Shown: in pieces, positions 7,801 to 55,998 of the stretch
Layout of the letters: each line of letters begins with the position of its first letter
How positions within the stretch are numbered: the stretch's first letter is position 1
NCBI GenBank assembly: GCA_965240325.2
Contig: OZ251232.1
Location: 310,001 to 374,000 of the forward strand
DNA: 64,000 bases
Direction of reading: 5' to 3'
From: Rebecca billardiae RCC1528
Lineage: Eukaryota > Protista > Haptophyta
Notes under the pieces: model-generated
What the model was told of the DNA's origin: nothing
The model's input: the letters and a program-made list of their open reading frames with translations, nothing else
The model's database searches: none
Translations under genes and position numbers: made by a program

Positions 7801-9227
7801 GCGTCCACGCCGCAGAAGGTGGCAAAGTACCACTGCTTGGTGCAGCGCGCGGGCAGCTTGCCCTCGCACAGCTTGCGCCACAGGCCCTCGAGGCCGAGGA
7901 ACTGCGCGTTGGCCAGGTAGCGCATCACGTCCGAGTCGGTGCGATCGGCGAACGACTTTGCCAGCTGCGAGGAAGCCGGCGTGCGGGCGCGGACGCGCAC
8001 ACGCGAGGGCGGCACGGGTCAGCGCGCGCGCAGGTGTGCGCGCCGCATCCGCATCCACTCCCACCGCTGGGTGGGCGAGCGTCGGGCGAGGCGGGCACGC
8101 GGCACGCGTGGCGCGACGCAGCGGCGGACCTGCATGGGCAGGAGCGGCACCGCGTCGCGACTCGTCACCGTCATCGGCACACCGCGCTCGAAGCAGAAGT
8201 CGTAGACGATGCGCGCGCCCTCGGGGTCGAACCCTGGGGATCGGTGGCGCGCGCGGGAGGCGGCGCGGCGGCGAGCGCGGCCAGTGAGCGACGCGCCCGC
8301 TGAGCGAGCGGTGCGCACTCGGAGCGACGACGGCGGCGCGCGCGCAGCGCGCAGCGCGCGGGCCGCACCGTTGTTCACGCTCGTGTCCGGCTTCCACCCG
8401 TGCGGCGCGCTCTCGTCCCCCTCGAGCCCGCCCTGCACCGCCACCTGTCGCACCTTGGCGCGCACGAGCTCGCCGTCCTCGACCATCGCGTCCGCGAGGT
8501 CGCGCAGGCTGCTGATGCACACGACGGTGAGCGAGTGCGGGCCCGCGGTGTTGAGCAGGCGGCGCACCAGCGCCGCGCCGTCCATCAGCCGCTCCTCGCC
8601 CACGCCCTCGAAGCCCGCCAGGTCGTACTCGTGCGGCTGCGCGGTGTAGGGCTTGCCCTGCGAGCCGATGCCCACCGGCACCTCGTCGTCCACGCCGAGC
8701 TGGTCGAGCAGGGCACGCGCGAGCCGGGCGCGCTTCTCGGGCTGGCCGCCCCCGTTGCACACGACGCCGCGCAGGAGCACCTCCTTGTGCACGTGCAGCA
8801 TCGCGAGCACGAGAATCGCCCTGCGCGCACGCGGGGGCGCAGGCCGACGGCGCGCCGTGAGGCGGACGAGTGCCGACTCGCAGCGCGCACGGCGCGCACG
8901 CGGATCTGCCGCGCAGGGATGGCGCGTCGTGTGGCGCTGCGCATCGCGCGCATGAGTGCGCGCACTTGACGTCATCTGGATCCGGGCCCTGTCGACCGGC
9001 AGGACGGCGCGCCCGGCAAAGGGGCGGCGGCGCCATCATCAGCCACGAGCGTGCAAGGAGCGCACCACGCGGCCACCGCGCCAGGCCAAAACGGCCAGGG
9101 CGCGCGCGCGTGCGCGCACCGGATCAGTGATGAGCAAGTACTCGGGCCGCCGCACCGATTTCAGCGCGAGCGGCCGCATGGGGGATGGCTTTACCGCGCC
9201 GGCGGCTTTTGGCTTACTGCCGGACAT
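4819..9227 (-). CDS. Fusion protein of inosine/uridine-preferring nucleoside hydrolase, ~6 TM helices and a C-terminal TIR-like domain (~1245 aa, 6 exons)
   Basis: Exons 9227-9120, 8988-8966, 8820-8369, 8233-8130, 7964-7712 and 7616-4819; all introns GT-AG; total 3738 nt, in frame. Spliced N-terminus LLITDPGPDPDDVKAILVL, then VQGG..NNGFDPEGA and PYDVLA (NH motifs). Hydrophobic block ~7080-6470. TIR-like FDAYIVHTWHD..VWIDALC..LVVLLG..SRMWFAAEL. Confidence 0.85.
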
Positions 9228-9624
9228 GGTGCTCGACAACGCCTCCGCCGCAGCACCTGCACAAGCGAGCCGGGGAGGCTAGCGCTGCCGGGGGAGACGA
9301 CCGAGTTTTGCGCGGCGGCAACGAGCCGCGTCGGTCTGATTCACCGCCGGGATCGGCGCGCGTCGTGAGCCGAACACCACCTGTGCTCGTCCGCCGCGAG
9401 CACTTGCTCTGCCCGTCTGCGTAGGCGCGGAACCGCCCGCTTGGCGTCGTGCGAATGTGCTATCTTCTCGGAACGACTATTATTGCAGGAATCCACTTGC
9501 GCATCTGACTAAGATCTGGAGGCGTTTGGTCTGGAGATAGTATTACGGCAACAGGAAAACGCCGCTTCGCCGATTTTTGTGCGGAGCGTTTTTTTGTGGT
9601 TGATGACGAGTCGAACCAACCAGG

Positions 9625-10363
9625 GGCTTGCAAACCAAGCCCCCCAAAACCCCTCGCGCCTTGGCGGGCAACACCTCTTAGGTGTTGCCCGTCCGGGAGC
9701 TTTTGAATACGATCTGCGCGTGCGCGGGCACTCCCGGACTGCCGCCGCACGGAGAAGGCCAGCAAGGCCAGCCCGCCCGCCCTCCTCGGTCGTCCGCCGC
9801 GGCGCGTGCGCGTCGAGGCGCATGGCGGCGTTCGTCGCGCCCGTCGCGCCCGTGCTCACGGGTCACGCACGCCCCGCGACCGATACGCATGTCTGGCGTG
9901 CCCTCCTTTTGCTCGCACTGCGGTCTCCTCGTCGACAGCCTTGTGATCACGCGCGCCGCCATTTCAACCGCTTGCTGGCCTGCCAGCTGCCGCGCACGCG
10001 CGTGCGGTCCAACCGATGTCAGCATGGCTGATGGCGACGCAGTGATGTTGAGTACTCTCCTGCCCATCGCACAGACGCGAAAAAGCCGACCTTGAACGCC
10101 CCAGGGACGCACGCGCGCCCATCACGCTCGTCGGACAGGCCTTCTCGAGAACTGCGCCTGCCATTCGGCAGGTCTCTGCGCGCAGAGAGGGCGGCGAGGG
10201 CGTGGACGAGGCGGCGCGATGGCTGCCTACGGCTGTTCTCGCTCCCGCAAAGCGCCCGCGCACGGCTGTCAAGCCCGCATGCGGCCTTGGGAGCGCTGCG
10301 CACGCGGGCCCTCGCGTCGCCCAGTGCCCGTCATCCTGTTTTGGGGGGCTTGGTTTGCAAGCC
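9625..10363. mobile_element. Putative non-autonomous TIR element (PIF/Harbinger-like), ~740 bp
   Basis: Perfect 26-bp TIR GGCTTGCAAACCAAGCCCCCCAAAAC at 9625-9650 and 10338-10363. Flanked by AGG direct repeats (or CAGGG if the TIR is 1 bp shorter). Confidence 0.7.
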
Positions 10364-45127: not shown

Positions 45128-47812
45128 TTACTGCTGATGACTCTGAGACTGATGCTTGCCGGCACCGCTGCCACTCGTCACGAACGGGTGCTTGAGCGCG
45201 GCGGCGGGCGTGAGCCTGCGCGTCGGATCGAGGACGAGCAGCTTGTCCAGCAGGTCGGCGAGCAGCGCGACCTTTCGCCCCTCCGCCTCGGAGAGCTTCC
45301 CAGCGCCGAGCAGCTGCGAGCGCACGTCCTTGCCCGGCTGCGGCTCGGCGGTGAACTTGACCTCGCGGATCACGTCGCGCCCGCTCACCTGCGCGGCCGA
45401 GCGCGCGCCGGGCGGTGCGGTGCGCGGCGCTCAGCGCACGGGCGGCAATGCGGCGCGGGCGCGGGCGCGCGCAGCGCGCGCGGCGGCGCGCGCACGCGCG
45501 CGCGCGCGCACCTTGTCCTTCTCGACCGCGAGGAAGTCGCCGTCCGGCGTGAAGTGCTCCGCGGTGAACGCGCCCTTGCGCAGCATGCGCGCGGGCACGC
45601 GGCCGCGTACCTGCTGGATGGCGCGCAGCATCGCGTTGTTGCTCAGGCCCTGCGCGCGCCGGGGCGGCGCGGCGGCGGGCGGCGCGGCGAGGGGGGCTCA
45701 GCGCGCAGCGCGGGCGGCGCCCGCGCGCCGGCGCCCGCGCAGCCCACCGCGCGCGCACACCTGGAAGAGGAAGCGGCCGGTGTACAGCTCGAAGAGCGTG
45801 ACCGCCGCCGACCACGTGTCGACCGGCGGGCCGTAGTGCAGCCCGATCATCACCTCGGGCGCGCGGTAGAAGCGGCTCTGCAGCAGCGGCGTGACCTCGA
45901 CCTCGTCCGCGCCGAGCGCGCTGCCCAGGTCGCACAGCTTGCACGTCGTGTACCGCTCGTTCACCACCATGTTGTCCGGCTTGAGGTCGGCGTGGATCAC
46001 GCCGCAGCGCTCGAGGTGCCGGAGTGCGGTGAACATGTGCCGCGCGTACGTGCGCACCGCGTCCACCTGGATGCCGCGCTTGTGCCCGTGCTGCCGCAGC
46101 GCCTGGCGCAGGTTCTGGTGCATGCCCTCGAAGGCGAGGCAGAGGTGGTTCTCGTGCTCGAACGTGCCGTAGAAGTTGATGATGTGCTGCCGCTCCAGCG
46201 CCTCGCGCTCCTCCGCCTCGCCAGCCGGGCCGCTCGCGCTGCGCTCGGCGGCCGGCTTGTCCGGCCCCGCGCGCAGCCGCTCGAGCACAGCCGCCTCCTT
46301 CTCGCCCGCGCGGCGCATCATCTCGTTGTTCCGGATGATCTTGATCGCGACGAAGGAGGAGGCCGCGCCCGCGGGCCCGCCGCTCTGCCGCAGGTCGACG
46401 CACTTCACCACGCTCGAGAACACGCCGCGGCCGTACTGCGCCACCACCTGGTAGCGGCCGTCCAGCACGTCGCCCGTGCGGTGCACGTAGTAGCCCTCCA
46501 CGTCGTCGTACGAGTCGCCGCGGTCGCGCTGCGCGGCGGCGGCGGCGGCGGTGGCGCCGGGCGCGCGCAGCGCGGCGGCGCGGACGGGCGAGTCCGTGAA
46601 CATGTCGAAGCCGCCGCCGCCGCCTTCGCCAGCATCCGCGCCGCCGCCGGCCGGCCCGGACGAGGGCGCCGCCTGCGCCGGCGGCGGTGGCCGCGGCGGC
46701 GGCGCGTTGGCCGACGCGCCGCCGCCTGCGGCAGCGCCCAGCGCACCGTCTGCGCCGCGCTCCTCCTCCTGCCGCTGGCGCTGCTCGAGCACAAAGCTGC
46801 GCAGCGCCGCCTCGCTCTCGCGCCGCGCCCACTCCGCCTCGCCCAGCTCCTCCCGGGTGGCAGCGCGCGCCGGCTGGGGCTCGGCCGCCTCCGCCTCCGC
46901 CTCCGCCTCCGCCTCCGCCTCCGCCTCCGCCTCCGCCTCCGCCTCCGCCTCCGCCTCCGCCTCGGCCTCCGCCTCCGCCTCCGCCCCCTCCGGCTGCGGG
47001 CCGCTGCCCTCGCTCTCGCTGCCACTGCGGACAGCGCACGGCTCGGCCGCGCCCGGCTGCGTGGCATGCGCGGCGGCGGCGGCGGCGGCGGCAGGGGGCG
47101 CTGGCACGGGCGCACGCGCGGCGGGCGCGGCGGGCGCCGCGCGCGGCGGCGGCGGCTGCGTCTGCTCCCCTCGCGCTGGCTGCGGCTGCTGCTGGTGTCT
47201 AGACACGATGGCCGCGCGCCTGCGCCGAGCCTCCTCGCGCTTGCGCGCGGCGGTCTCCTCGTCGTCCTCCTCGTCGGCGCCGGCCGCGCGCCGCTCGAGC
47301 TGCTCGGCGACACGCCGCCTCCACGCCTCCTCGTCCTCCTGCTCGTCCGCGCGCCGCCCCGCTCCTTGCGCGCCCGCAGCGCGCACTGGCTCGCGCTCGA
47401 CGCTGCGCGCGCGCTGCGAGCCCGGAGGCGGCGGCGGCGGCGGCGCGTCGCGGCGGTGCTCGCGCTCGCGCTCGTGTGGCGGGCCAGGGCGCGAGCCGAA
47501 CGCACCTGCGTCGTCCCCGCCACGCGGCGGCGGCGGCGGCGGCCCTCGCCGCCCCTCCCACTCCCGCGCGCGCGGCGGGGAGCGCCAGCCACCGGGCCGG
47601 TCGTCCCGACGGCGGTCTCGGTCAGGGTCGTAGCCGCGGTCGCGGTCGCGGTCGCGGTACGAGTCTCGAGCGCCTGCGCGATCGTACTCGCGGCGGCCGT
47701 ACTCCGCGGGCCCACCTCGCTCGTCCGCGCCGCGCGCGCGCTTGTAGGCCGGCGAGGGTGATCGCGACCTCACGTGTTCATCGCGGTGCCGGTGCCTGGG
47801 AGGGCCGTTCAT
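45128..47812 (-). CDS. PRP4K: Serine/threonine kinase PRP4 homologue, 3 exons
   Basis: Exons 47812-45761, 45649-45512 and 45388-45128. RD/RS-rich N-terminus, FDMF, DSYDDVEGYY, GRGVFSSVV, VAIKIIRNNEMM, HLCLAFE, HADLKPDN, SRFYRAPE and ALKHPF. Confidence 0.95.
46887..46984 (-). repeat. (GAGGCG)n coding hexamer repeat giving an (EA)n tract in PRP4K
   Basis: ~16 units of GCCTCC on the + strand. Confidence 0.93.
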
Positions 47813-48093
47813 ACCGTGCGAGGCGAGACGGACGGGAGCACGGGGTGAGCGAGCGCACGCACTCGCCGAGAGGGCGGCGGCGCACGAGAGGACCCGCGGA
47901 CCACGAGGAGAGGAGAGCGCGGCAGGCTCGTCCGCCTTCACCACGAATCCACGATGGCCGCGTGTGTTCACGCCTCCGCATCAGCTTTGATGCTCGGCAG
48001 GCCCCTTATAACGGGGGTGGACTCCATTTTTAACTTTGCGACGGCGCGAAAAGGGAAAGAGAGAGGGAGGAAGACGAGGGAGGGAAAAAGAGG

Positions 48094-49899
48094 CACAGTG
48101 AACACGCCCCAGCGGCGGAGCGGACAAACAAAACTGCTTGGGAACCGGCCGATTTGGCAGGGCGATGGCGGGATCTCAGTCTTCCGCCCGAGGCCTTCGC
48201 CGTCGCTCGGCCGCTCTAGCCGGGCCCACGGGCACGATCATCCGTGGGCCCATCCCGTACTGGGCGGACCGTATAGCTGGCCATTACATGGGACACTAGC
48301 TCGGGTGTCGCGCCACGACTCTGCCACGAGAAGAGCCCGCTGTCCGAAGCAGGCGTGTTCGAGCTCGCAGCAGCACGCGACCGACATGTGATGCTTGCTC
48401 CCACCCGTCCCGATGGATGGCGGGCCTGGGTGGCTATCTGAGTGGGTGATTGGGTGCCAAGACTTGCCCGCATGCCTCTTCGGGACGGCTGGAAATGTCT
48501 CGCCCCCAATATCCTCCACCTCAAAAGTGCTGCACTTTTTTGGGCTCGAGCGGCACATCGAGCGCATGCCCGTCGGGTCACATCCTCAAGCAATCAAGGC
48601 GCACTTGAGCGTTGTTTGTGACGCGCCTGGTGTCCAGATGTCCATCGAGTGCGTGCTTCTTGTCCGACCTGGCGGTCCATGCCTTCACGTCTACGATGTT
48701 TATGGATCGGACGCAGGTGATGGACTGCTGCGAGAGCTCTGGACACCGACGGCCAGTACACCAGGCGAATGGTGCCGACCATGGCTGACGGTGCGTGTGC
48801 CTGCACACTTCGGGCGTGCTTTCGAGCGCCCGCCTCCCCGACCGCCAGCGCCTCTGCTTCCCACGCTAGGGCTGCATGATTCCCACCCAGTTTTGTGCTC
48901 ATGCAATGATGCCGTCTGCGCGGCCCCGTCTGCGCACGCGCGCAGAACAGCTCGTTTGCGCTGACTCAGGGCGACCTGAGCGAGCTTGACTACCTCCACG
49001 ACCTCGTTGCGCACTTGCGCACTCGACGACGTGCCGAGGTCGCGGTTCCGCCGATGGTTGCATCTCGTTCAGGCGCACATCACAGCAGTGTGCATCAGTC
49101 GGATGACCATGACGAATGCGAGCAGCTCAGCGAGGCACAACCATGCCCAGTCGGGTGCGCTTTGGGGTGCCGGGCGAGTGCGAAGGCCTCGCATTCCACG
49201 ATTCACATCGCTCACGTCACCCTCTCTGCGTCGACCCACTGCCCACGCGCTTCGCGCGCCGTCGCGCAGATCACTGCTCATCAGCTTGCAGCTCAAAGGA
49301 GACGATGAGGTCGCGGCAGTGCGCTGGCTCGTCGAGCTGACGTGCCGCGGTCGCGGCAGCTGGGCGCCAGCTTGGCAGCTCGTGTGCGCTCTTCTTCCGC
49401 GAGCAGCTGCCGGCCTGCTTCAGCTTCGTGGGCAAGCGCGCGCGATGTCTTTCCGCGGGAGTGCGCAGGGTGCAGCTGCGGCAGCAAACGCATCGTGCTC
49501 GAGCAGCGCGCGAGGAGGCGGCACGGGCGATTCGAGGCTCATTCGAGTCGCGGTGACTCTGCCAGGGCATATACTCTCCACACCTCACCTACCGAGCTGG
49601 ACCCTGTCTTCGCTTCCTCCAGCGATCCGCGCGCGCACACGCGGTGTTGACAGCTCGATCAGCCAGTCTCGGTGCCGTTCGGCGCCGAGCTCGAGGACGG
49701 GCAGGGCGAGCAGCTGCGCTGGCATGAGGGCTCTCTGACGCTTCTGACAGGGCGCTATGCGTGTCTAGCTGTCCGCTGACATGTCCCAGTCGCCGCAGGC
49801 CCTCCGTGGGCTCGGCCATCGAGCCTCACGCGAGCGACCCGCGAGGCGGGCGTCCGCCATTTTGTTTGTCCGCTTCGCCGCTGGGGCGTGTTCACTGTG
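48094..49899. mobile_element. 1.8-kb non-autonomous CAC-ended TIR element (Transib/CMC-like) with RSS-like TIRs
   Basis: 40-bp TIRs with 1 mismatch: CACAGTGAACACGCCCCAGCGGCG(G/A)AGCGGACAAACAAAA at 48094-48133 and 49860-49899; GG on both sides; inserted in a purine tract. Confidence 0.85.
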
Positions 49900-51520
49900 G
49901 GGAGAAAGGAAAGAGAGAGGGAGGAATCGGAGGATGTGAATATGCGGTTATCACTCTCACGCGGGCCGCACCGGCGGTCGGCGGAGGTGTCACTCACCGT
50001 CAGCCCACGCCACAACGGTACTTACCGCGCGCCTCACCGCAGTCATCACCGCTGCTTACCACTGCTACGCCAGCACAGTCCCTGCGGCCTGCCTCAGGAT
50101 TGCGCGCGCGCCCACGCCCACGCGGCACACGGCCACGCACCCGGCCACACCTGCCCGTGACACGCACTGTCAGCAGTGGGGCGGTGCGCGCGGCCGGGCA
50201 CACGCGCCGGCCACGGCCGCAACCTCGCGCGACGGCCACTGCTGTGGCGCCACTGCTGCGGCGCCGCACGCGGGTGCTGCTCCGCGCGCGCGGCTCTCTC
50301 CCCCTCCGCCGCGATGATACACACCGCGCGCAGCACGCGTCGCTGCGCCCGTGCGCCGTGGGCACACATAATCCAGGTTGAGCGTCGCCGAGGTGTTGGC
50401 GAGGAGCGCCGCCGCCAGCGCAGTCATCGGCTGTAACACTCGACCCACCGCCACCAGCCGCATCGCTTGGACTGGCACCGTCATGGCGACAGACGGCGTG
50501 AGGGGGCGATGCAGGCGGGTTGCTGTAAGCGACAGCGTCCCCGGGCCGCGCAATCCGCTCACGCAGTGCCATCCGCTGCGCCATTAGCACAGCGACTCAC
50601 GCCGCACTGCCAGCATGCACTGCCCTGTCCTGAGACTTATAGAACTTGCATTGGCAGTGCTGTCATCGGCAGAGTGCCATCACTGTCACTGCCAAACTGT
50701 CGAGAGGTGCACATGAAGCAGCGGCTCCGGCCGTGACGCGCGGCCCTCTAATCTCTATCCGTACTTCTGAGTAAATTTGACTGAGTATGATGATTATATT
50801 CTATCAGTGAGTCTGGAGCGTGCTCACTCGAGTCTCGATGCTGCCGGCGCTGCGGCGCAGTCGCCAGTCGGCGCCGTGCCATCGGTGGCACATGATGCCG
50901 ATCAGCCGATCAGAAGCTGAAGCGTGATGACGACGATAACACGGCGCCGGCAAAGCAGGACTTGAGAGCACTGCAGCACTCTGCACTGCTACGTCGCGAC
51001 GACAATGAGATGGAGAACAACTACGCAGGTGAGCGCCAAATGGCAGCAGCAGCTGACGGTGCGCAGCAGCCGATTGCGTTTCGCCGTTATGCCCAGGCAG
51101 CATATCCCGGCGGGGCGTTGTGATGTTGAGATGATTGACCTCGTTGAAGCGCGCTCGGCCGCACCTCGACCACCGCACAACGATGCAGATTGGCGGCGTG
51201 AGCGTAGCAGTGGCCACAAGATCGCTCGCAGCTTCAGGCGACCCACACACGGCGAGCTCGATGCAAGACGTGAAATGTATGCGAGAGTGGCGAGCGCTCG
51301 CCTGACTCGCGAAGACGCCAGACGATGGGGGTGTCGGAACACCCGAATCATCGTCACCCGCCCGTGCGAGAGCGCGCGCTGCGACCCGGCCGCGTGGCCA
51401 CTGCGAGGAGCGGATGGAGGAGACGATCCTGCCATCGGAAAGGGTTGAGCAGAGCTCCCTGCTCACGATGCATCGCATCGCATCGGGATATCAAGCCGCT
51501 GGAACGCCCGCAGGCCGCGG

Positions 51521-52733: not shown

Positions 52734-54240
52734 ATGGACTTTGAGCTGTCGCAGGCGAAGAAGCGCTTCGAGAAGGAGGCGGCGAAGCGCAAGCAGGCCG
52801 ACAAGGCGCGGCTCGAGCGCCAGCGTCGTGACCGCGAGCTCGCCGAGCGCAAGCGCGTGGAGTTTGAGGCGGCCGCAGCCGCCGAGCGTGCGGCCGCGGC
52901 CGAGGCGGCAGAGAAGTTGCGGCTCAAGCACGACGCGCTGCTGGAGAAGAACAAGGGCGTGTGGTCCAGCCAGACCCTCGTGCCCCAGCTCAACCTCACC
53001 GCCGAGGCCAAGGGCATCCGCCGGCGCGCGGACAAGATCTCCCTCCCGCGCTCGTTTGGCGAGGCGCTCACACCGCAGCACGACGCCTCGAAGCACGGGC
53101 CGATGTGTTTCGAGCTGGCGCTCGGGACGAAGCTGACGCACGCCACGCTCCTCGACTTTGAGGCCCCCGAGGGCGTCGTCGGCCTGCCCCCACAGGTGCT
53201 GCGCTGCCTCGGCCTGCCCGAGGGCGGCGTCCGTGGCGCCGGCGCCGCCGAGGGGGCGCCGGCAGTCGCGGCCGGCGCGCAGGACGATGCTGCCGTGCCG
53301 GGCGTGCGCGTGACGGTCACGTATCGCACGCTGCGCCCGGGCACGTACGCCAAGCTGCAGCCCGTCACCGCCGGCTTCCAGCGCGACGTGGGCGACATCA
53401 AGAGCGCGCTGGAGGAGGAGCTGCACACGCACGCGACGCTCTCAGGTGCGCACAGCAGCACAGGCCACAGCCGAGCGCGGTCAAGCGCCCTCGAGCGCTG
53501 CCGGCGCGGGCTGCGGCCCCGGCGCGCCGCCGCGCGCGCAGCACACGCGCACGGGCCGTGCGCTGCGCGCTCACTCGCGCCCGCGCCCTCCCCACGCGCG
53601 CGCCCCGCCCCTGCCAGAGGGCGACACAGTCGTCGTGCGCTCGCTCGAGGACGGCAGCGCGCACGAGCTCAGAGTGGTCTCGCTGATGCCCGAGCCCGCC
53701 GTCTCGGTGATCGACACGGATCTGGAGGTGGACATCGCGCCGTCGGTGGAGGCGGAGGCGGCGCAGGCGGCGGAGCTTGCGAGGAAGGCGCGCGAGGCCG
53801 AGCTCGCGCAGCACGCCGAGGCCGAGCGCCAGCGGCGCGAGGCGGAGGAGACGGCCTCGCGCGCCGCGCTGCTCGAAGCTGCGGCCGAGGCGCGCGAGGC
53901 GGCGGTGCGCGCGCTCGCGCCCGAGCCGGACGACGGCGAGGGCGTGGTGACCGTGATGGTCAAGCTGCCGACCGGGGGCCGGGCGACGCGCCGGTTCGAG
54001 CGCGCCGAGCCGCTCGAGCACATCTTCCAGTTCGTCGACACCCTCGAGCTGGGCGAGGCGGCCGCGCTCGCAGCACACGGCTACCGGCTGGCATCGCAGT
54101 TCCCGCGCCGCGTGTGGGAGCGGCCGCCGTCCGCCATGGCGGTCGACGGCGACGGCGCTGGGGCGGGCGCTGTGCTCACGCTCGAGGCAGCCGGGCTCGC
54201 GAGCAAACAAGAGGCGCTGTTCGTCGAGCTCGCAGGGTAG
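52734..54240 (+). CDS. UFD1-like domain plus UBX domain protein (Cdc48/p97 adaptor), 2 exons
   Basis: Exons 52734-53445 and 53618-54240. DKISLP, PMCFEL, THATLLDFEAPEG, GTYAKLQP, VSVIDTDLEVD (UFD1); VKLPTG..RRF..LASQFPRR..TLEAAGL..LFVE (UBX). Confidence 0.9.
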
Positions 54241-54859: not shown

Positions 54860-55998
54860 CAAGGGCGGTAAGGGCTGTCAACTCCCAGTGGCGCCGAGTG
54901 GCGGAGGTTCCGTGCCCCTCAACTCGTGCGGCCTCGCGGCGCAGCGGCTAAGTCTCCTGGGGCGCCGCCCTGGAGGGCGCGTGGGGTGCGCACGCCGCGG
55001 GCTCCTGCGCCCGCGGCAGCGGCCGCGGACACGGCGCGCGTGGTTGGTCGCCTGCTAGACAGCACGTAGTACCCTCCCACGCCGCGCGCCGCGCTCGCCG
55101 GTGCCCTCGCCGCGCCTCAGGCCAGCCGCGCACGCGCGCCGCGCCAATGGCCAGCCGTGGCCACGAGCCAGCCGCCGGCGCGCGCGCGGTGCGCGGTGCG
55201 GTCGGCGCGGGTCGGGCGCGCGCCCGGGGCGAGGCTCGCGTATGATGTGCGCGCGGCATGCCGCCTCGCGCCGCCGCGCTGACGCCCGCATGGGTCAGCG
55301 CGCACGCGTTTACATGCTGTCGAGTGTGCATTGCCATGTTTGAAAATGCTCACGTTGAGACGATCATGGGACGGCAGCGACGCGTGATAGACAAGCGCAG
55401 ACCACGAATATGTGCACGGCCAGCCTCATGTCATGGCAAGCAAGTCCCCGAGTGCCCGCGTTCGTCGCACTGATGCGCTCACAACCACTTATCCAAGCTC
55501 ATTTCTGATGGCCGAGGAATGCTCGACGAGCACTCTTCAGCAGCCGCGTGCAACGTGATCATGCTCGTGGGTGGCGGCGCGAGGCGGCATGCCGCGCGCC
55601 CATCATACGCGAGCCTCGCCCCGGGCGCGCGCCCGACCCGCGCCGACCGCACCGCGCACCGCGCGCGCGCCGGCGGCTGGCTCGTGGCCACGGCTGGCCA
55701 TTGGCGCGGCGCGCGTGCGCGGCTGGCCTGAGGCGCGGCGAGGGCACCGGCGAGCGCGGCGCGCGGCGTGGGAGGGTACTACGTGCTGTCTAGCAGGCAA
55801 CCAACCACGCGCGCCGTGTCCGCGGCCGCTGCCGCGGGCGCAGGAGCCCGCGGCGTGCGCACCCCACGCGCCCTCCAGGGCGGCGCCCCAGGAGACTTAG
55901 CCGCTGCGCCGCGAGGCCGCACGAGTTGAGGGGCACGGAAACCTCCGCCACTCGGCGCCACTGGGAGTTGACAGCCCTTACCGCCCTTACCGCCCTTG
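54860..55998. mobile_element. Foldback element family B, copy 2 (uninterrupted, ~1.14 kb)
   Basis: CAAGGGCGGTAAGGG...CCCTTACCGCCCTTG; ~410-bp inverted arms and ~290-bp core nearly identical to 27241-28319; no recognisable TSD. Confidence 0.9.

What the first reader, a model, noticed from the sequence alone, without database searches (positions are those of the whole stretch)
48094..49899. Transposon whose TIRs mimic a V(D)J 23-RSS (CACAGTG + 23 bp + ACAAACAAA)
Seen: both 40-bp TIRs start with the exact RSS heptamer CACAGTG, followed by exactly 23 bp (AACACGCCCCAGCGGCGRAGCGG), then ACAAACAAA (6/9 to the nonamer ACAAAAACC). An alternative register, ACAAAA, gives a 27-bp spacer. Known: RAG1 derives from Transib transposases; Transib/RAG-like elements have CAC-heptamer TIRs and 5-bp TSDs; RAG-like elements have been reported in a pelagophyte alga. 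Inference: a non-autonomous relative of a Transib/RAGL or CMC element, implying an autonomous partner elsewhere in this genome. Caveats: the ends are symmetric (23/23), only a 2-bp GG duplication is evident (5-bp flanks AGAGG vs GGGAG differ, which favours CMC/EnSpm-type), and no transposase is visible inside.
Basis: partly seen in the sequence, partly recalled or inferred. Interest (0 to 1): 0.75.

Follow-up and report, generated by a model that had tools for sequence, protein, structure and literature searches.

The report
Non-coding CAC-ended transposon, 2-bp duplications
This is a real, recently mobile 1.8-kb non-coding jumping element in a very GC-rich alga. It duplicates 2 bases of target DNA, not the 5 that define Transib/RAG elements, so its likeness to an antibody-gene recombination signal is mostly superficial and the element is ordinary.

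Summary
Each repeat starts with CACAGTG and has ACAAACAAA exactly 23 bp further in.

The element is one of about 10 full-length copies (94-100% identical) in a 72-Mb, roughly 70% GC eukaryotic genome. All 7 copies with both ends intact (6 independent sites) carry a 2-bp target duplication: GG, AG x3, GC, AA, GT. None carries 3 or 5 bp. That fails the defining Transib/RAGL feature and fits the CACTA/Mirage/Chapaev/Transib (CMCT) assemblage, which has CA..TG termini and 2-5-bp duplications.

The element is non-coding and non-autonomous. No longer copy with these termini exists in the assembly.

Genome-wide, CACAGTG+N23+ACAAA occurs 17 times. Sixteen are this family, one is not, and the control gives 1. 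Other ends that share the outer 23-28 bp lack the A-rich block. The "nonamer" is therefore private to this family, not a conserved two-part signal.

The scan has already flagged similar CACAGTG-ended, 2-bp-duplication families on other DNA of this genome, reportedly including 5.8-6.3-kb autonomous ones with a RAG1-like fold. I did not verify those reports.

Verdict: new family of a known kind, low interest.

The parts
48092..48093 (.). left copy of the 2-bp target site duplication (GG)
   Evidence: the same dinucleotide directly flanks both ends. Six other complete copies each have their own matching dinucleotide.
48094..48133 (+). left 40-bp terminal inverted repeat
   Evidence: pair I1, 98% complementary; conserved in all copies
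48094..48100 (+). terminal heptamer CACAGTG, the presumed cleavage end
48094..48117 (+). outer 24-bp module, shared with other non-autonomous ends elsewhere in the genome; the likely transposase-binding core
   Evidence: 25 genome hits at 3 mismatches or fewer; solo or other-family ends identical for 23-28 bp, then unrelated
48124..48132 (+). A-rich nonamer-like block ACAAACAAA, 23 bp from the heptamer
   Evidence: It is private to this family genome-wide.
48134..49859 (.). non-coding interior
   Evidence: ORFs are arginine/alanine/serine-rich GC artefacts. No Pfam hit and no Rfam hit. Against an 88% identical relic, substitutions fall 23/19/17 over the three codon positions and there are frameshifting indels.
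49860..49899 (-). right 40-bp terminal inverted repeat (nonamer-like block at 49861-49869, heptamer at 49893-49899)
49900..49901 (.). right copy of the 2-bp target site duplication (GG)

Best explanation
window:48094-49899 is one copy of a young, non-coding, non-autonomous cut-and-paste DNA transposon family of about 10 full-length copies. A DDE transposase encoded elsewhere moves it in trans. That enzyme most likely recognises the outer ~24 bp of the TIR, cuts at the CAC tip, and inserts the element across a 2-bp staggered target cut, with a mild preference for locally less GC-rich DNA. By its ends (CAC...GTG) and its 2-bp duplication it belongs to the broad CACTA/EnSpm-Mirage-Chapaev-Transib (CMCT) assemblage. 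It is not a Transib or RAG-like element in the strict sense. The heptamer identity with the V(D)J signal is a trait of that assemblage and of this genome's CAC-ended families. The nonamer-like A-rich block at 23 bp is a feature of this one family and probably a coincidence. Shown here: the TIRs, the copy number, the 2-bp TSD, the lack of coding capacity, recent mobility, the lack of an autonomous copy with the same termini, and the privacy of the A-block. Inferred: the superfamily of the transposase, the cleavage chemistry, and which part of the TIR is bound.
For: TIRs are 40 nt, 39/40. There are 10 full-length copies at 94-100% identity on 8 contigs, plus two older relics at 88% and 83%. The 2-bp TSDs are GG, AG, AG, AG, GC, AA, GT in 7/7 copies with both ends (6 independent sites, since the two C24 copies share flanks). 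No 3-bp or 5-bp match is seen at any site. Chance for six independent 2-bp matches is about (1/16)^6. The copies form three subgroups, with pairs only 0.2-0.3% apart at different loci with different flanks, which indicates recent transposition. The element is non-coding. The terminal 12-mer occurs 25 times against 2 for the control, and the only inverted pairs are the 1.8-kb copies and one 46-kb pair on C33 that lies inside a larger inverted duplication. Other ends share only the outer 23-28 bp, including a different ~1.75-kb family on C21 with its own subterminal repeats. Of 17 genome hits to CACAGTG+N23+ACAAA, 16 are this family, and the control gives 1. The 30-bp flanks average about 51% GC, against about 68% for the 1.4-kb flanks. 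Literature: the CMCT clade shares 5'-CA..TG-3' termini and makes 2-5-bp TSDs (PMC12730594). CMC-group elements with 2-bp TSDs are described (bioRxiv 10.1101/2025.05.19.654958; PMC4298943). The 5-bp TSD is the hallmark of Transib and RAGL (PMC1131882; PMC10629977).
Against: No transposase was examined, so the superfamily rests on the termini and TSD length alone. Other superfamilies, such as PHIS/ISL2EU, can also make 2-bp TSDs. Pfam RAG1 and Transposase_21 found nothing in the genome, but the controls were silent too, so that result is uninformative. The exact RSS heptamer together with an A-rich block 23 bp further in has a nominal chance of only about 0.4-1%. With a 22-bp spacer, inside the RSS tolerance of 23 +/- 1, the two critical nonamer positions 5-6 read AA. 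A functional two-part end is therefore not excluded.
Confidence: 0.75

Rival explanations
1. It is a genuine Transib/RAG-like non-autonomous element whose TIR is a functional heptamer-23-nonamer signal bound in two parts by a RAG1-like transposase.
For: The RSS heptamer is exact, the spacer is 23 bp, and the nonamer match is 6/9. Transib TIRs have this same layout (PMC1131882). Earlier scan notes, unverified, report RAG1-fold transposases and two-part ends in other CACAGTG families of this genome.
Against: The 2-bp TSD in 7/7 copies fails the defining 5-bp TSD. The block is absent from other ends that share the outer 23-28 bp and from every other family genome-wide. Nonamer position 6, one of the two critical ones, is C at the 23-bp register. 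The targets are not GC-rich, unlike Transib and RAG targets.
Confidence: 0.07
2. It is a non-autonomous member of another superfamily that also makes 2-bp duplications (PHIS/ISL2EU-like, or an undescribed one). On this reading the CAC...GTG ends arose by convergence.
For: TSD length alone does not name a superfamily. Harbinger-related elements make 0-, 2- or 3-bp TSDs (PMC12730594). No transposase was seen here.
Against: CA(C)...(G)TG termini combined with a 2-bp TSD are the CMCT signature. The TSDs are not TA, which excludes the Tc1/mariner, PHISTA, ESTA and CNEST-like TA-targeting groups.
Confidence: 0.15
3. It is not mobile, and the copies arose by segmental duplication.
For: The two C24 copies, 14.46 kb apart, share identical flanks and are identical to each other.
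Against: All other copies have unrelated flanks, break exactly at the TIR tips, and each carries its own 2-bp duplication.
Confidence: 0.01

Closest known systems
CMC / CMCT assemblage (EnSpm/CACTA, Mirage, Chapaev, Transib and allies), in particular its 2-bp-TSD lineages
   Same: 5'-CAC...GTG-3' termini, short TIRs, a 2-bp target duplication, and non-autonomous derivatives moved in trans.
   Different: No transposase is known for this family. There are no obvious arrays of subterminal repeats. The TSDs are not TA, unlike ESTA and CNEST. The termini are CAC, not the CCC of TRC elements.
Transib and RAG-like (RAGL/ProtoRAG) transposons
   Same: A CAC-initiated heptamer, here the exact RSS form CACAGTG, and an A-rich block 23 bp further in, recalling the Transib 38-bp TIR.
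   Different: The TSD is 2 bp, not 5 bp. The targets are not GC-rich. The second block is not conserved across related ends. No RAG1-like or RAG2-like gene is associated with the family.
V(D)J 23-RSS
   Same: Identical heptamer, a 23-bp spacer, and a 6/9 nonamer match.
   Different: Critical nonamer position 6 is C at the 23-bp register. Both ends are 23-type, so no 12/23 pairing is possible. There is no evidence that a RAG-type enzyme acts on it.

Membership tests
Transib / RAGL | 5-bp target site duplication | tested here: not met
   7/7 complete copies have exactly 2 bp. No 3-bp or 5-bp match is seen. Definition from PMC1131882 and PMC10629977.
Transib / RAGL | TIR beginning with a CAC heptamer | tested here: met
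   CACAGTG at both tips.
Transib / RAGL | second conserved (nonamer-like) block at a fixed spacing, conserved across families | tested here: not met
   The block is present in this family only. 16 of 17 genome hits to heptamer+N23+ACAAA are this family and the control gives 1. It is absent from ends that share the outer 23-28 bp. Caveat: only the exact ACAAA at exactly 23 bp was searched.
Transib / RAGL | RAG1-core-like DDE transposase (plus a RAG2-like kelch gene for RAGL) | not testable with these tools
   No autonomous copy carries these termini. The Pfam RAG1 scan of the genome was blank, but so were the controls.
Transib / RAGL | GC-rich target preference | tested here: not met
   The 30-bp flanks average about 51% GC in a roughly 68-70% GC background.
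CMC / CMCT (EnSpm-Mirage-Chapaev-Transib clade) | 5'-CA..TG-3' termini | tested here: met
   CAC...GTG. Definition in PMC12730594.
CMC / CMCT (EnSpm-Mirage-Chapaev-Transib clade) | 2-5-bp TSD | tested here: met
   2 bp.
CMC / CMCT (EnSpm-Mirage-Chapaev-Transib clade) | [quoted passage not shown] | not testable with these tools
   No partner transposase was retrieved. The Pfam Transposase_21 scan was blank with silent controls.
TA-targeting 2-bp-TSD groups (Tc1/mariner, PHISTA, ESTA, CNEST) | TA target duplication | tested here: not met
   The TSDs are GG, AG, GC, AA, GT.

The most novel reading that the evidence does not exclude
The family is mobilised by one of the RAG1-fold transposases that earlier scan notes report in this alga. 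On this reading the enzyme reads a two-part end (a CAC heptamer plus an A/T-rich block about 23 bp further in) while making 2-bp rather than 5-bp target cuts. That would make two-part, RSS-like end recognition older and more widespread than the Transib/RAG lineage.
Probability: 0.15. Interest if true: 0.6.

Novelty: new member of a known kind. Interest (0 to 1): 0.22.

Why it matters
On its own it matters little. It is one more passenger family of a CAC-ended, 2-bp-duplicating DNA transposon group in a GC-rich alga. It is useful as a clean negative control for claims of RSS mimicry: an exact heptamer and a 23-bp-spaced A-rich block can occur in an element that fails the Transib/RAG target-duplication test. 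The family also gives a set of natural end variants that could be used to map what the still-unidentified transposase needs. These include a copy lacking the left A-block, two copies lacking the outer 12-14 bp, and other families sharing only the outer 23 bp.

Tried and rejected
1. I tested the C33 pair of TIRs 46 kb apart (C33:55382 and C33:101755) as a giant autonomous element. I rejected it. The 63 bp outside each tip and the 575 bp inside are themselves inverted copies (651-bp arms, 96.5%). There is no direct TSD. The 575 bp is unique to C33. The interior holds unrelated items:
- a 3.5-kb element with 322-bp direct repeats and more than 45 genomic copies;
- a 1522-aa ORF with reverse-transcriptase-like motifs;
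- a host-like giant ORF.

2. I looked for a second TIR within 10 kb of the solo ends at C3:3385653, C21:1197599, C36:46173, C31:987214 and C22:1371659. No intact second tip was found. At C21 the solo end closes a ~1.75-kb element of another family whose left tip is degraded.

3. I searched for coding remnants in the element and in the 88% and 83% relics on C1 and C29. There are none.

4. Whole-genome scans with Pfam RAG1 (PF12940) and Transposase_21 (PF02992) were blank, but the controls were silent too, so they are uninformative.

5. Relaxed terminus searches (17-mer with 3 mismatches, 12-mer with 1 mismatch) gave mostly chance-level hits and no inverted pairs in the listed part.

6. Scans for the 23-nt terminus in public metagenome and viral contigs gave no hit.

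7. A scan of all held DNA for other CAC-ended TIR pairs with transposase-like ORFs found only foldbacks and this family.

8. Two protein searches of the genome failed on the server yet counted against the cap. The 'genus' scope is not available for this genome.

Full report
**1. Observation**

- The arms 48094-48133 and 49860-49899 are 40 nt long and 98% complementary.
- Each arm starts with CACAGTG, followed by 23 nt, followed by ACAAACAAA.
- That block matches the RSS nonamer consensus at 6 of 9 positions. Registers at 25-27 bp also give 6/9.
- The 24-nt tip occurs twice in the window and never in 100 shuffles.
- Only GG is duplicated at the flanks.

**2. It is a repeat family**

The window is G000:C15:310001-374000, in a 72-Mb, 41-contig eukaryotic assembly of roughly 64-78% GC.

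A DNA search of the whole assembly found 10 full-length copies at 94-100% identity:
- two on C15;
- one each on C32, C21, C5, C3, C13 and C31;
- two on C24.

It also found two older partial relics: C1 at 88% over 970 bp and C29 at 83-87% over about 400 bp.

Aligned, the copies form three subgroups. Several pairs are only 0.2-0.3% apart but sit at different loci with unrelated flanks, so transposition was recent. The two C24 copies, 14.46 kb apart, are identical and share flanks, so they are a segmental duplication.

Three copies are damaged:
- The C32 and C3 copies lack the outer 14 and 12 bp of the right TIR.
- The C13 copy has a deletion of about 120 bp that removes the inner part of the left TIR, including the A-rich block.

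**3. Target duplication**

In every copy with both tips present, the two bases outside the left tip equal the two bases outside the right tip.

| Copy | TSD |
|---|---|
| window | GG |
| C21 | AG |
| C24 (one event) | AG |
| C5 | AG |
| C13 | GC |
| C31 | AA |
| C15:2062972 | GT |

- Extending to 3 bp fails at every site, and 5 bp fails everywhere.
- Six independent sites each matching 2 bp by chance has a probability of about (1/16)^6.
- The first duplicated base is always a purine.
- The 30-bp flanks average about 51% GC, against about 68% for the surrounding 1.4 kb.
- At the window copy a purine-rich 19-mer lies on both sides (pair D2). It is 22 bp from the left tip and 8 bp from the right tip, so it is a local repeat of the target and not a duplication made by insertion.

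**4. Non-coding and non-autonomous**

- The ORFs inside are arginine/alanine/serine-rich, as expected of random frames in GC-rich DNA.
- None hits Pfam at E up to 1, apart from one meaningless 0.32.
- Rfam finds nothing.
- Against the 88% relic on C1, the 59 substitutions inside the longest frame fall 23/19/17 over the three codon positions. The alignment carries indels of 2, 7 and 19 bp.
- No coding remnant flanks the relics.

**5. Search for the partner**

- The 24-nt tip at 3 mismatches or fewer has 25 hits genome-wide.
- The exact terminal 12-mer has 25 hits against 2 for the reversed control.
- The only inverted pairs are the 1.8-kb copies and one pair 46 kb apart on C33.

The C33 pair is not a simple element:
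- The 63 bp outside each tip and the 575 bp inside are inverted copies of each other (651-bp arms, 96.5%).
- They are nested in a second inverted pair further out.
- There is no direct duplication.
- The 575 bp occurs nowhere else.
- The interior holds other repeats and a host-like ORF.

No autonomous copy with these termini is therefore in the assembly. The family must depend on an enzyme from an element whose ends differ, or one that has been lost.

Whole-genome scans with Pfam RAG1 and Transposase_21 were blank, but the tool's own controls were silent, so this says nothing. Two protein searches failed on the server.

**6. What part of the TIR is shared**

Four other ends carry the outer 23-28 bp and then diverge: C3:3385653, C21:1197599, C36:46173 and C31:987214.

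The C21 end belongs to a different non-coding element of about 1.75 kb. That element has its own subterminal repeats, several copies of a 15-nt motif at both ends. A TA tract follows the shared 23 bp, and the left tip is degraded.

None of these ends has ACAAACAAA at 23 bp, although several have some A/T-rich stretch at variable distance (roughly 33 to 46 bp in).

Genome-wide, CACAGTG + 23 N + ACAAA occurs 17 times. Sixteen hits are this family, including the C33 pair; one is elsewhere; the reversed control gives 1.

The outer ~24 bp therefore behave as the shared functional module, and the nonamer-like block is private to this family. Within the family its conservation is uninformative, because all copies are under 7% diverged.

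**7. How RSS-like is it?**

According to Kapitonov and Jurka 2005 (PMC1131882):
- Only heptamer positions 1-3 and nonamer positions 5-6 are essential in RSSs.
- Transib TIRs are CACAATG + 23 bp + AAAAAAATC.
- The 5-bp TSD sets Transib apart from all other superfamilies.

RAGL elements, including the divergent one in Aureococcus, are likewise described with 5-bp, GC-rich TSDs (PMC10629977).

Here heptamer positions 1-3 fit. Nonamer positions 5-6 read AC at the 23-bp register and AA at 22 bp. The TSD and the target composition do not fit.

With the element's base composition, a 6/9 nonamer match at exactly 23 bp has a chance of about 0.4%, and about 1% at 22-24 bp. Earlier scan notes list many CACAGTG-ended families in this genome, so one such coincidence is unremarkable.

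**8. Classification and mechanism**

Kojima 2025 (PMC12730594) defines the CMCT clade (EnSpm/CACTA, Mirage, Chapaev, Transib, Plavaka, ESTA, Lanisha) by two traits:
- shared C(2)C and H(3-4)H motifs in the transposase;
- 5'-CA..TG-3' termini with 2-5-bp TSDs.

CMC-group elements with 2-bp TSDs are documented. The present family meets both DNA-level criteria. It is not TA-specific, which excludes the Tc1/mariner, PHISTA, ESTA and CNEST-like groups.

I therefore read it as a non-autonomous CMCT-type element, moved in trans by a DDE transposase. The enzyme most likely binds the outer ~24 bp, cleaves at the CAC tip and integrates across a 2-bp stagger. The enzyme's identity and chemistry are inferred, not shown.

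Earlier notes of this scan say that 5.8-6.3-kb autonomous elements with CACAGTG or CACAGCG ends, 2-bp TSDs and a RAG1-like predicted fold exist elsewhere in this genome, said to be a haptophyte. They also say that other non-coding CACAGTG families show 2-bp TSDs. I could not check the transposase claims. My own TSD result for this family agrees with theirs for other families.

**9. Setting**

The copy lies in an intergenic stretch between two ordinary genes:
- About 115 bp to its left is the 5' end of a minus-strand protein-kinase ORF (45701-47980).
- Further to its right is a UBX-domain ORF (53314-54237).

No effect on either gene can be judged from sequence.

**10. Verdict**

The Transib/RAG-like and 23-RSS-mimic reading is not supported. 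This is a new family of a known kind, already paralleled by other families the scan has flagged in the same genome, and of low interest.

Noticed in passing
G000:C33:43601-53147 (L031/L035): A tandem satellite array of about 9.5 kb with a period of about 195 bp. Shifted self-alignments (units compared with one another) are about 93% identical. It lies near the start of contig C33, next to the nested inverted repeats.
   Followed up: no
G000:C33:95477-98946 (L037:5477-8946): A 3.5-kb element with lower GC (about 50-60%), bounded by 322-bp direct repeats (99.4% identical). It encodes a 757-aa ORF with no Pfam hit. More than 45 copies at 91-99% protein identity are spread over the genome, mostly with intact 850-915-aa frames. 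Its C-terminal half is about 49% identical to parts of ~2000-aa ORFs elsewhere.
   Followed up: partly
G000:C33:87027-91592 (L043:2027-6592, minus strand): A 1522-aa open frame with reverse-transcriptase-like motifs by eye but no Pfam hit at E<0.01. Nearby, the ORF at C33:104488-107994 hits RVT_1.
   Followed up: no
G000:C33:53148-53796 / 107932-108578 and 55319-55956 / 101178-101828: Two nested pairs of ~650-bp inverted repeats (99.2% and 96.5%) enclose about 46-55 kb. The inner pair contains one end of the CACAGTG family plus 63 bp of flank.
   Followed up: partly
window:54861-55988: A foldback of about 1.1 kb with arms of about 417 nt that are 99-100% complementary and a 297-nt centre. It overlaps the start of an unannotated 548-aa ORF.
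   Followed up: no
G000:C21:~1195830-1197599 (L039:~8080-9849): A different non-coding element of about 1.75 kb. It shares only the outer 23 bp of the TIR, followed by a TA tract and several copies of a 15-nt subterminal motif at both ends. Its left tip is degraded.
   Followed up: partly
G000:C36:46030-46290 (L040:~9730-9990): A solo 27-nt copy of the TIR tip sits in the centre of a 68-nt-armed palindrome next to a long G run.
   Followed up: no
genome-wide, e.g. G000:C1:704147, C1:2323114, C3:3911027, C5:4108378: The 12-mer CACAGTGAACAA, one mismatch from this family's tip, recurs at 16 or more sites among the listed hits. Overall the 12-mer with 1 mismatch has 307 hits against 167 for the control. 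This is probably the tip of another CAC-ended family.
   Followed up: no
G000:C24:398639-400448 and 413099-414908: Two identical copies of the element with identical flanks, 14.46 kb apart. This is a recent segmental duplication that includes the element.
   Followed up: no
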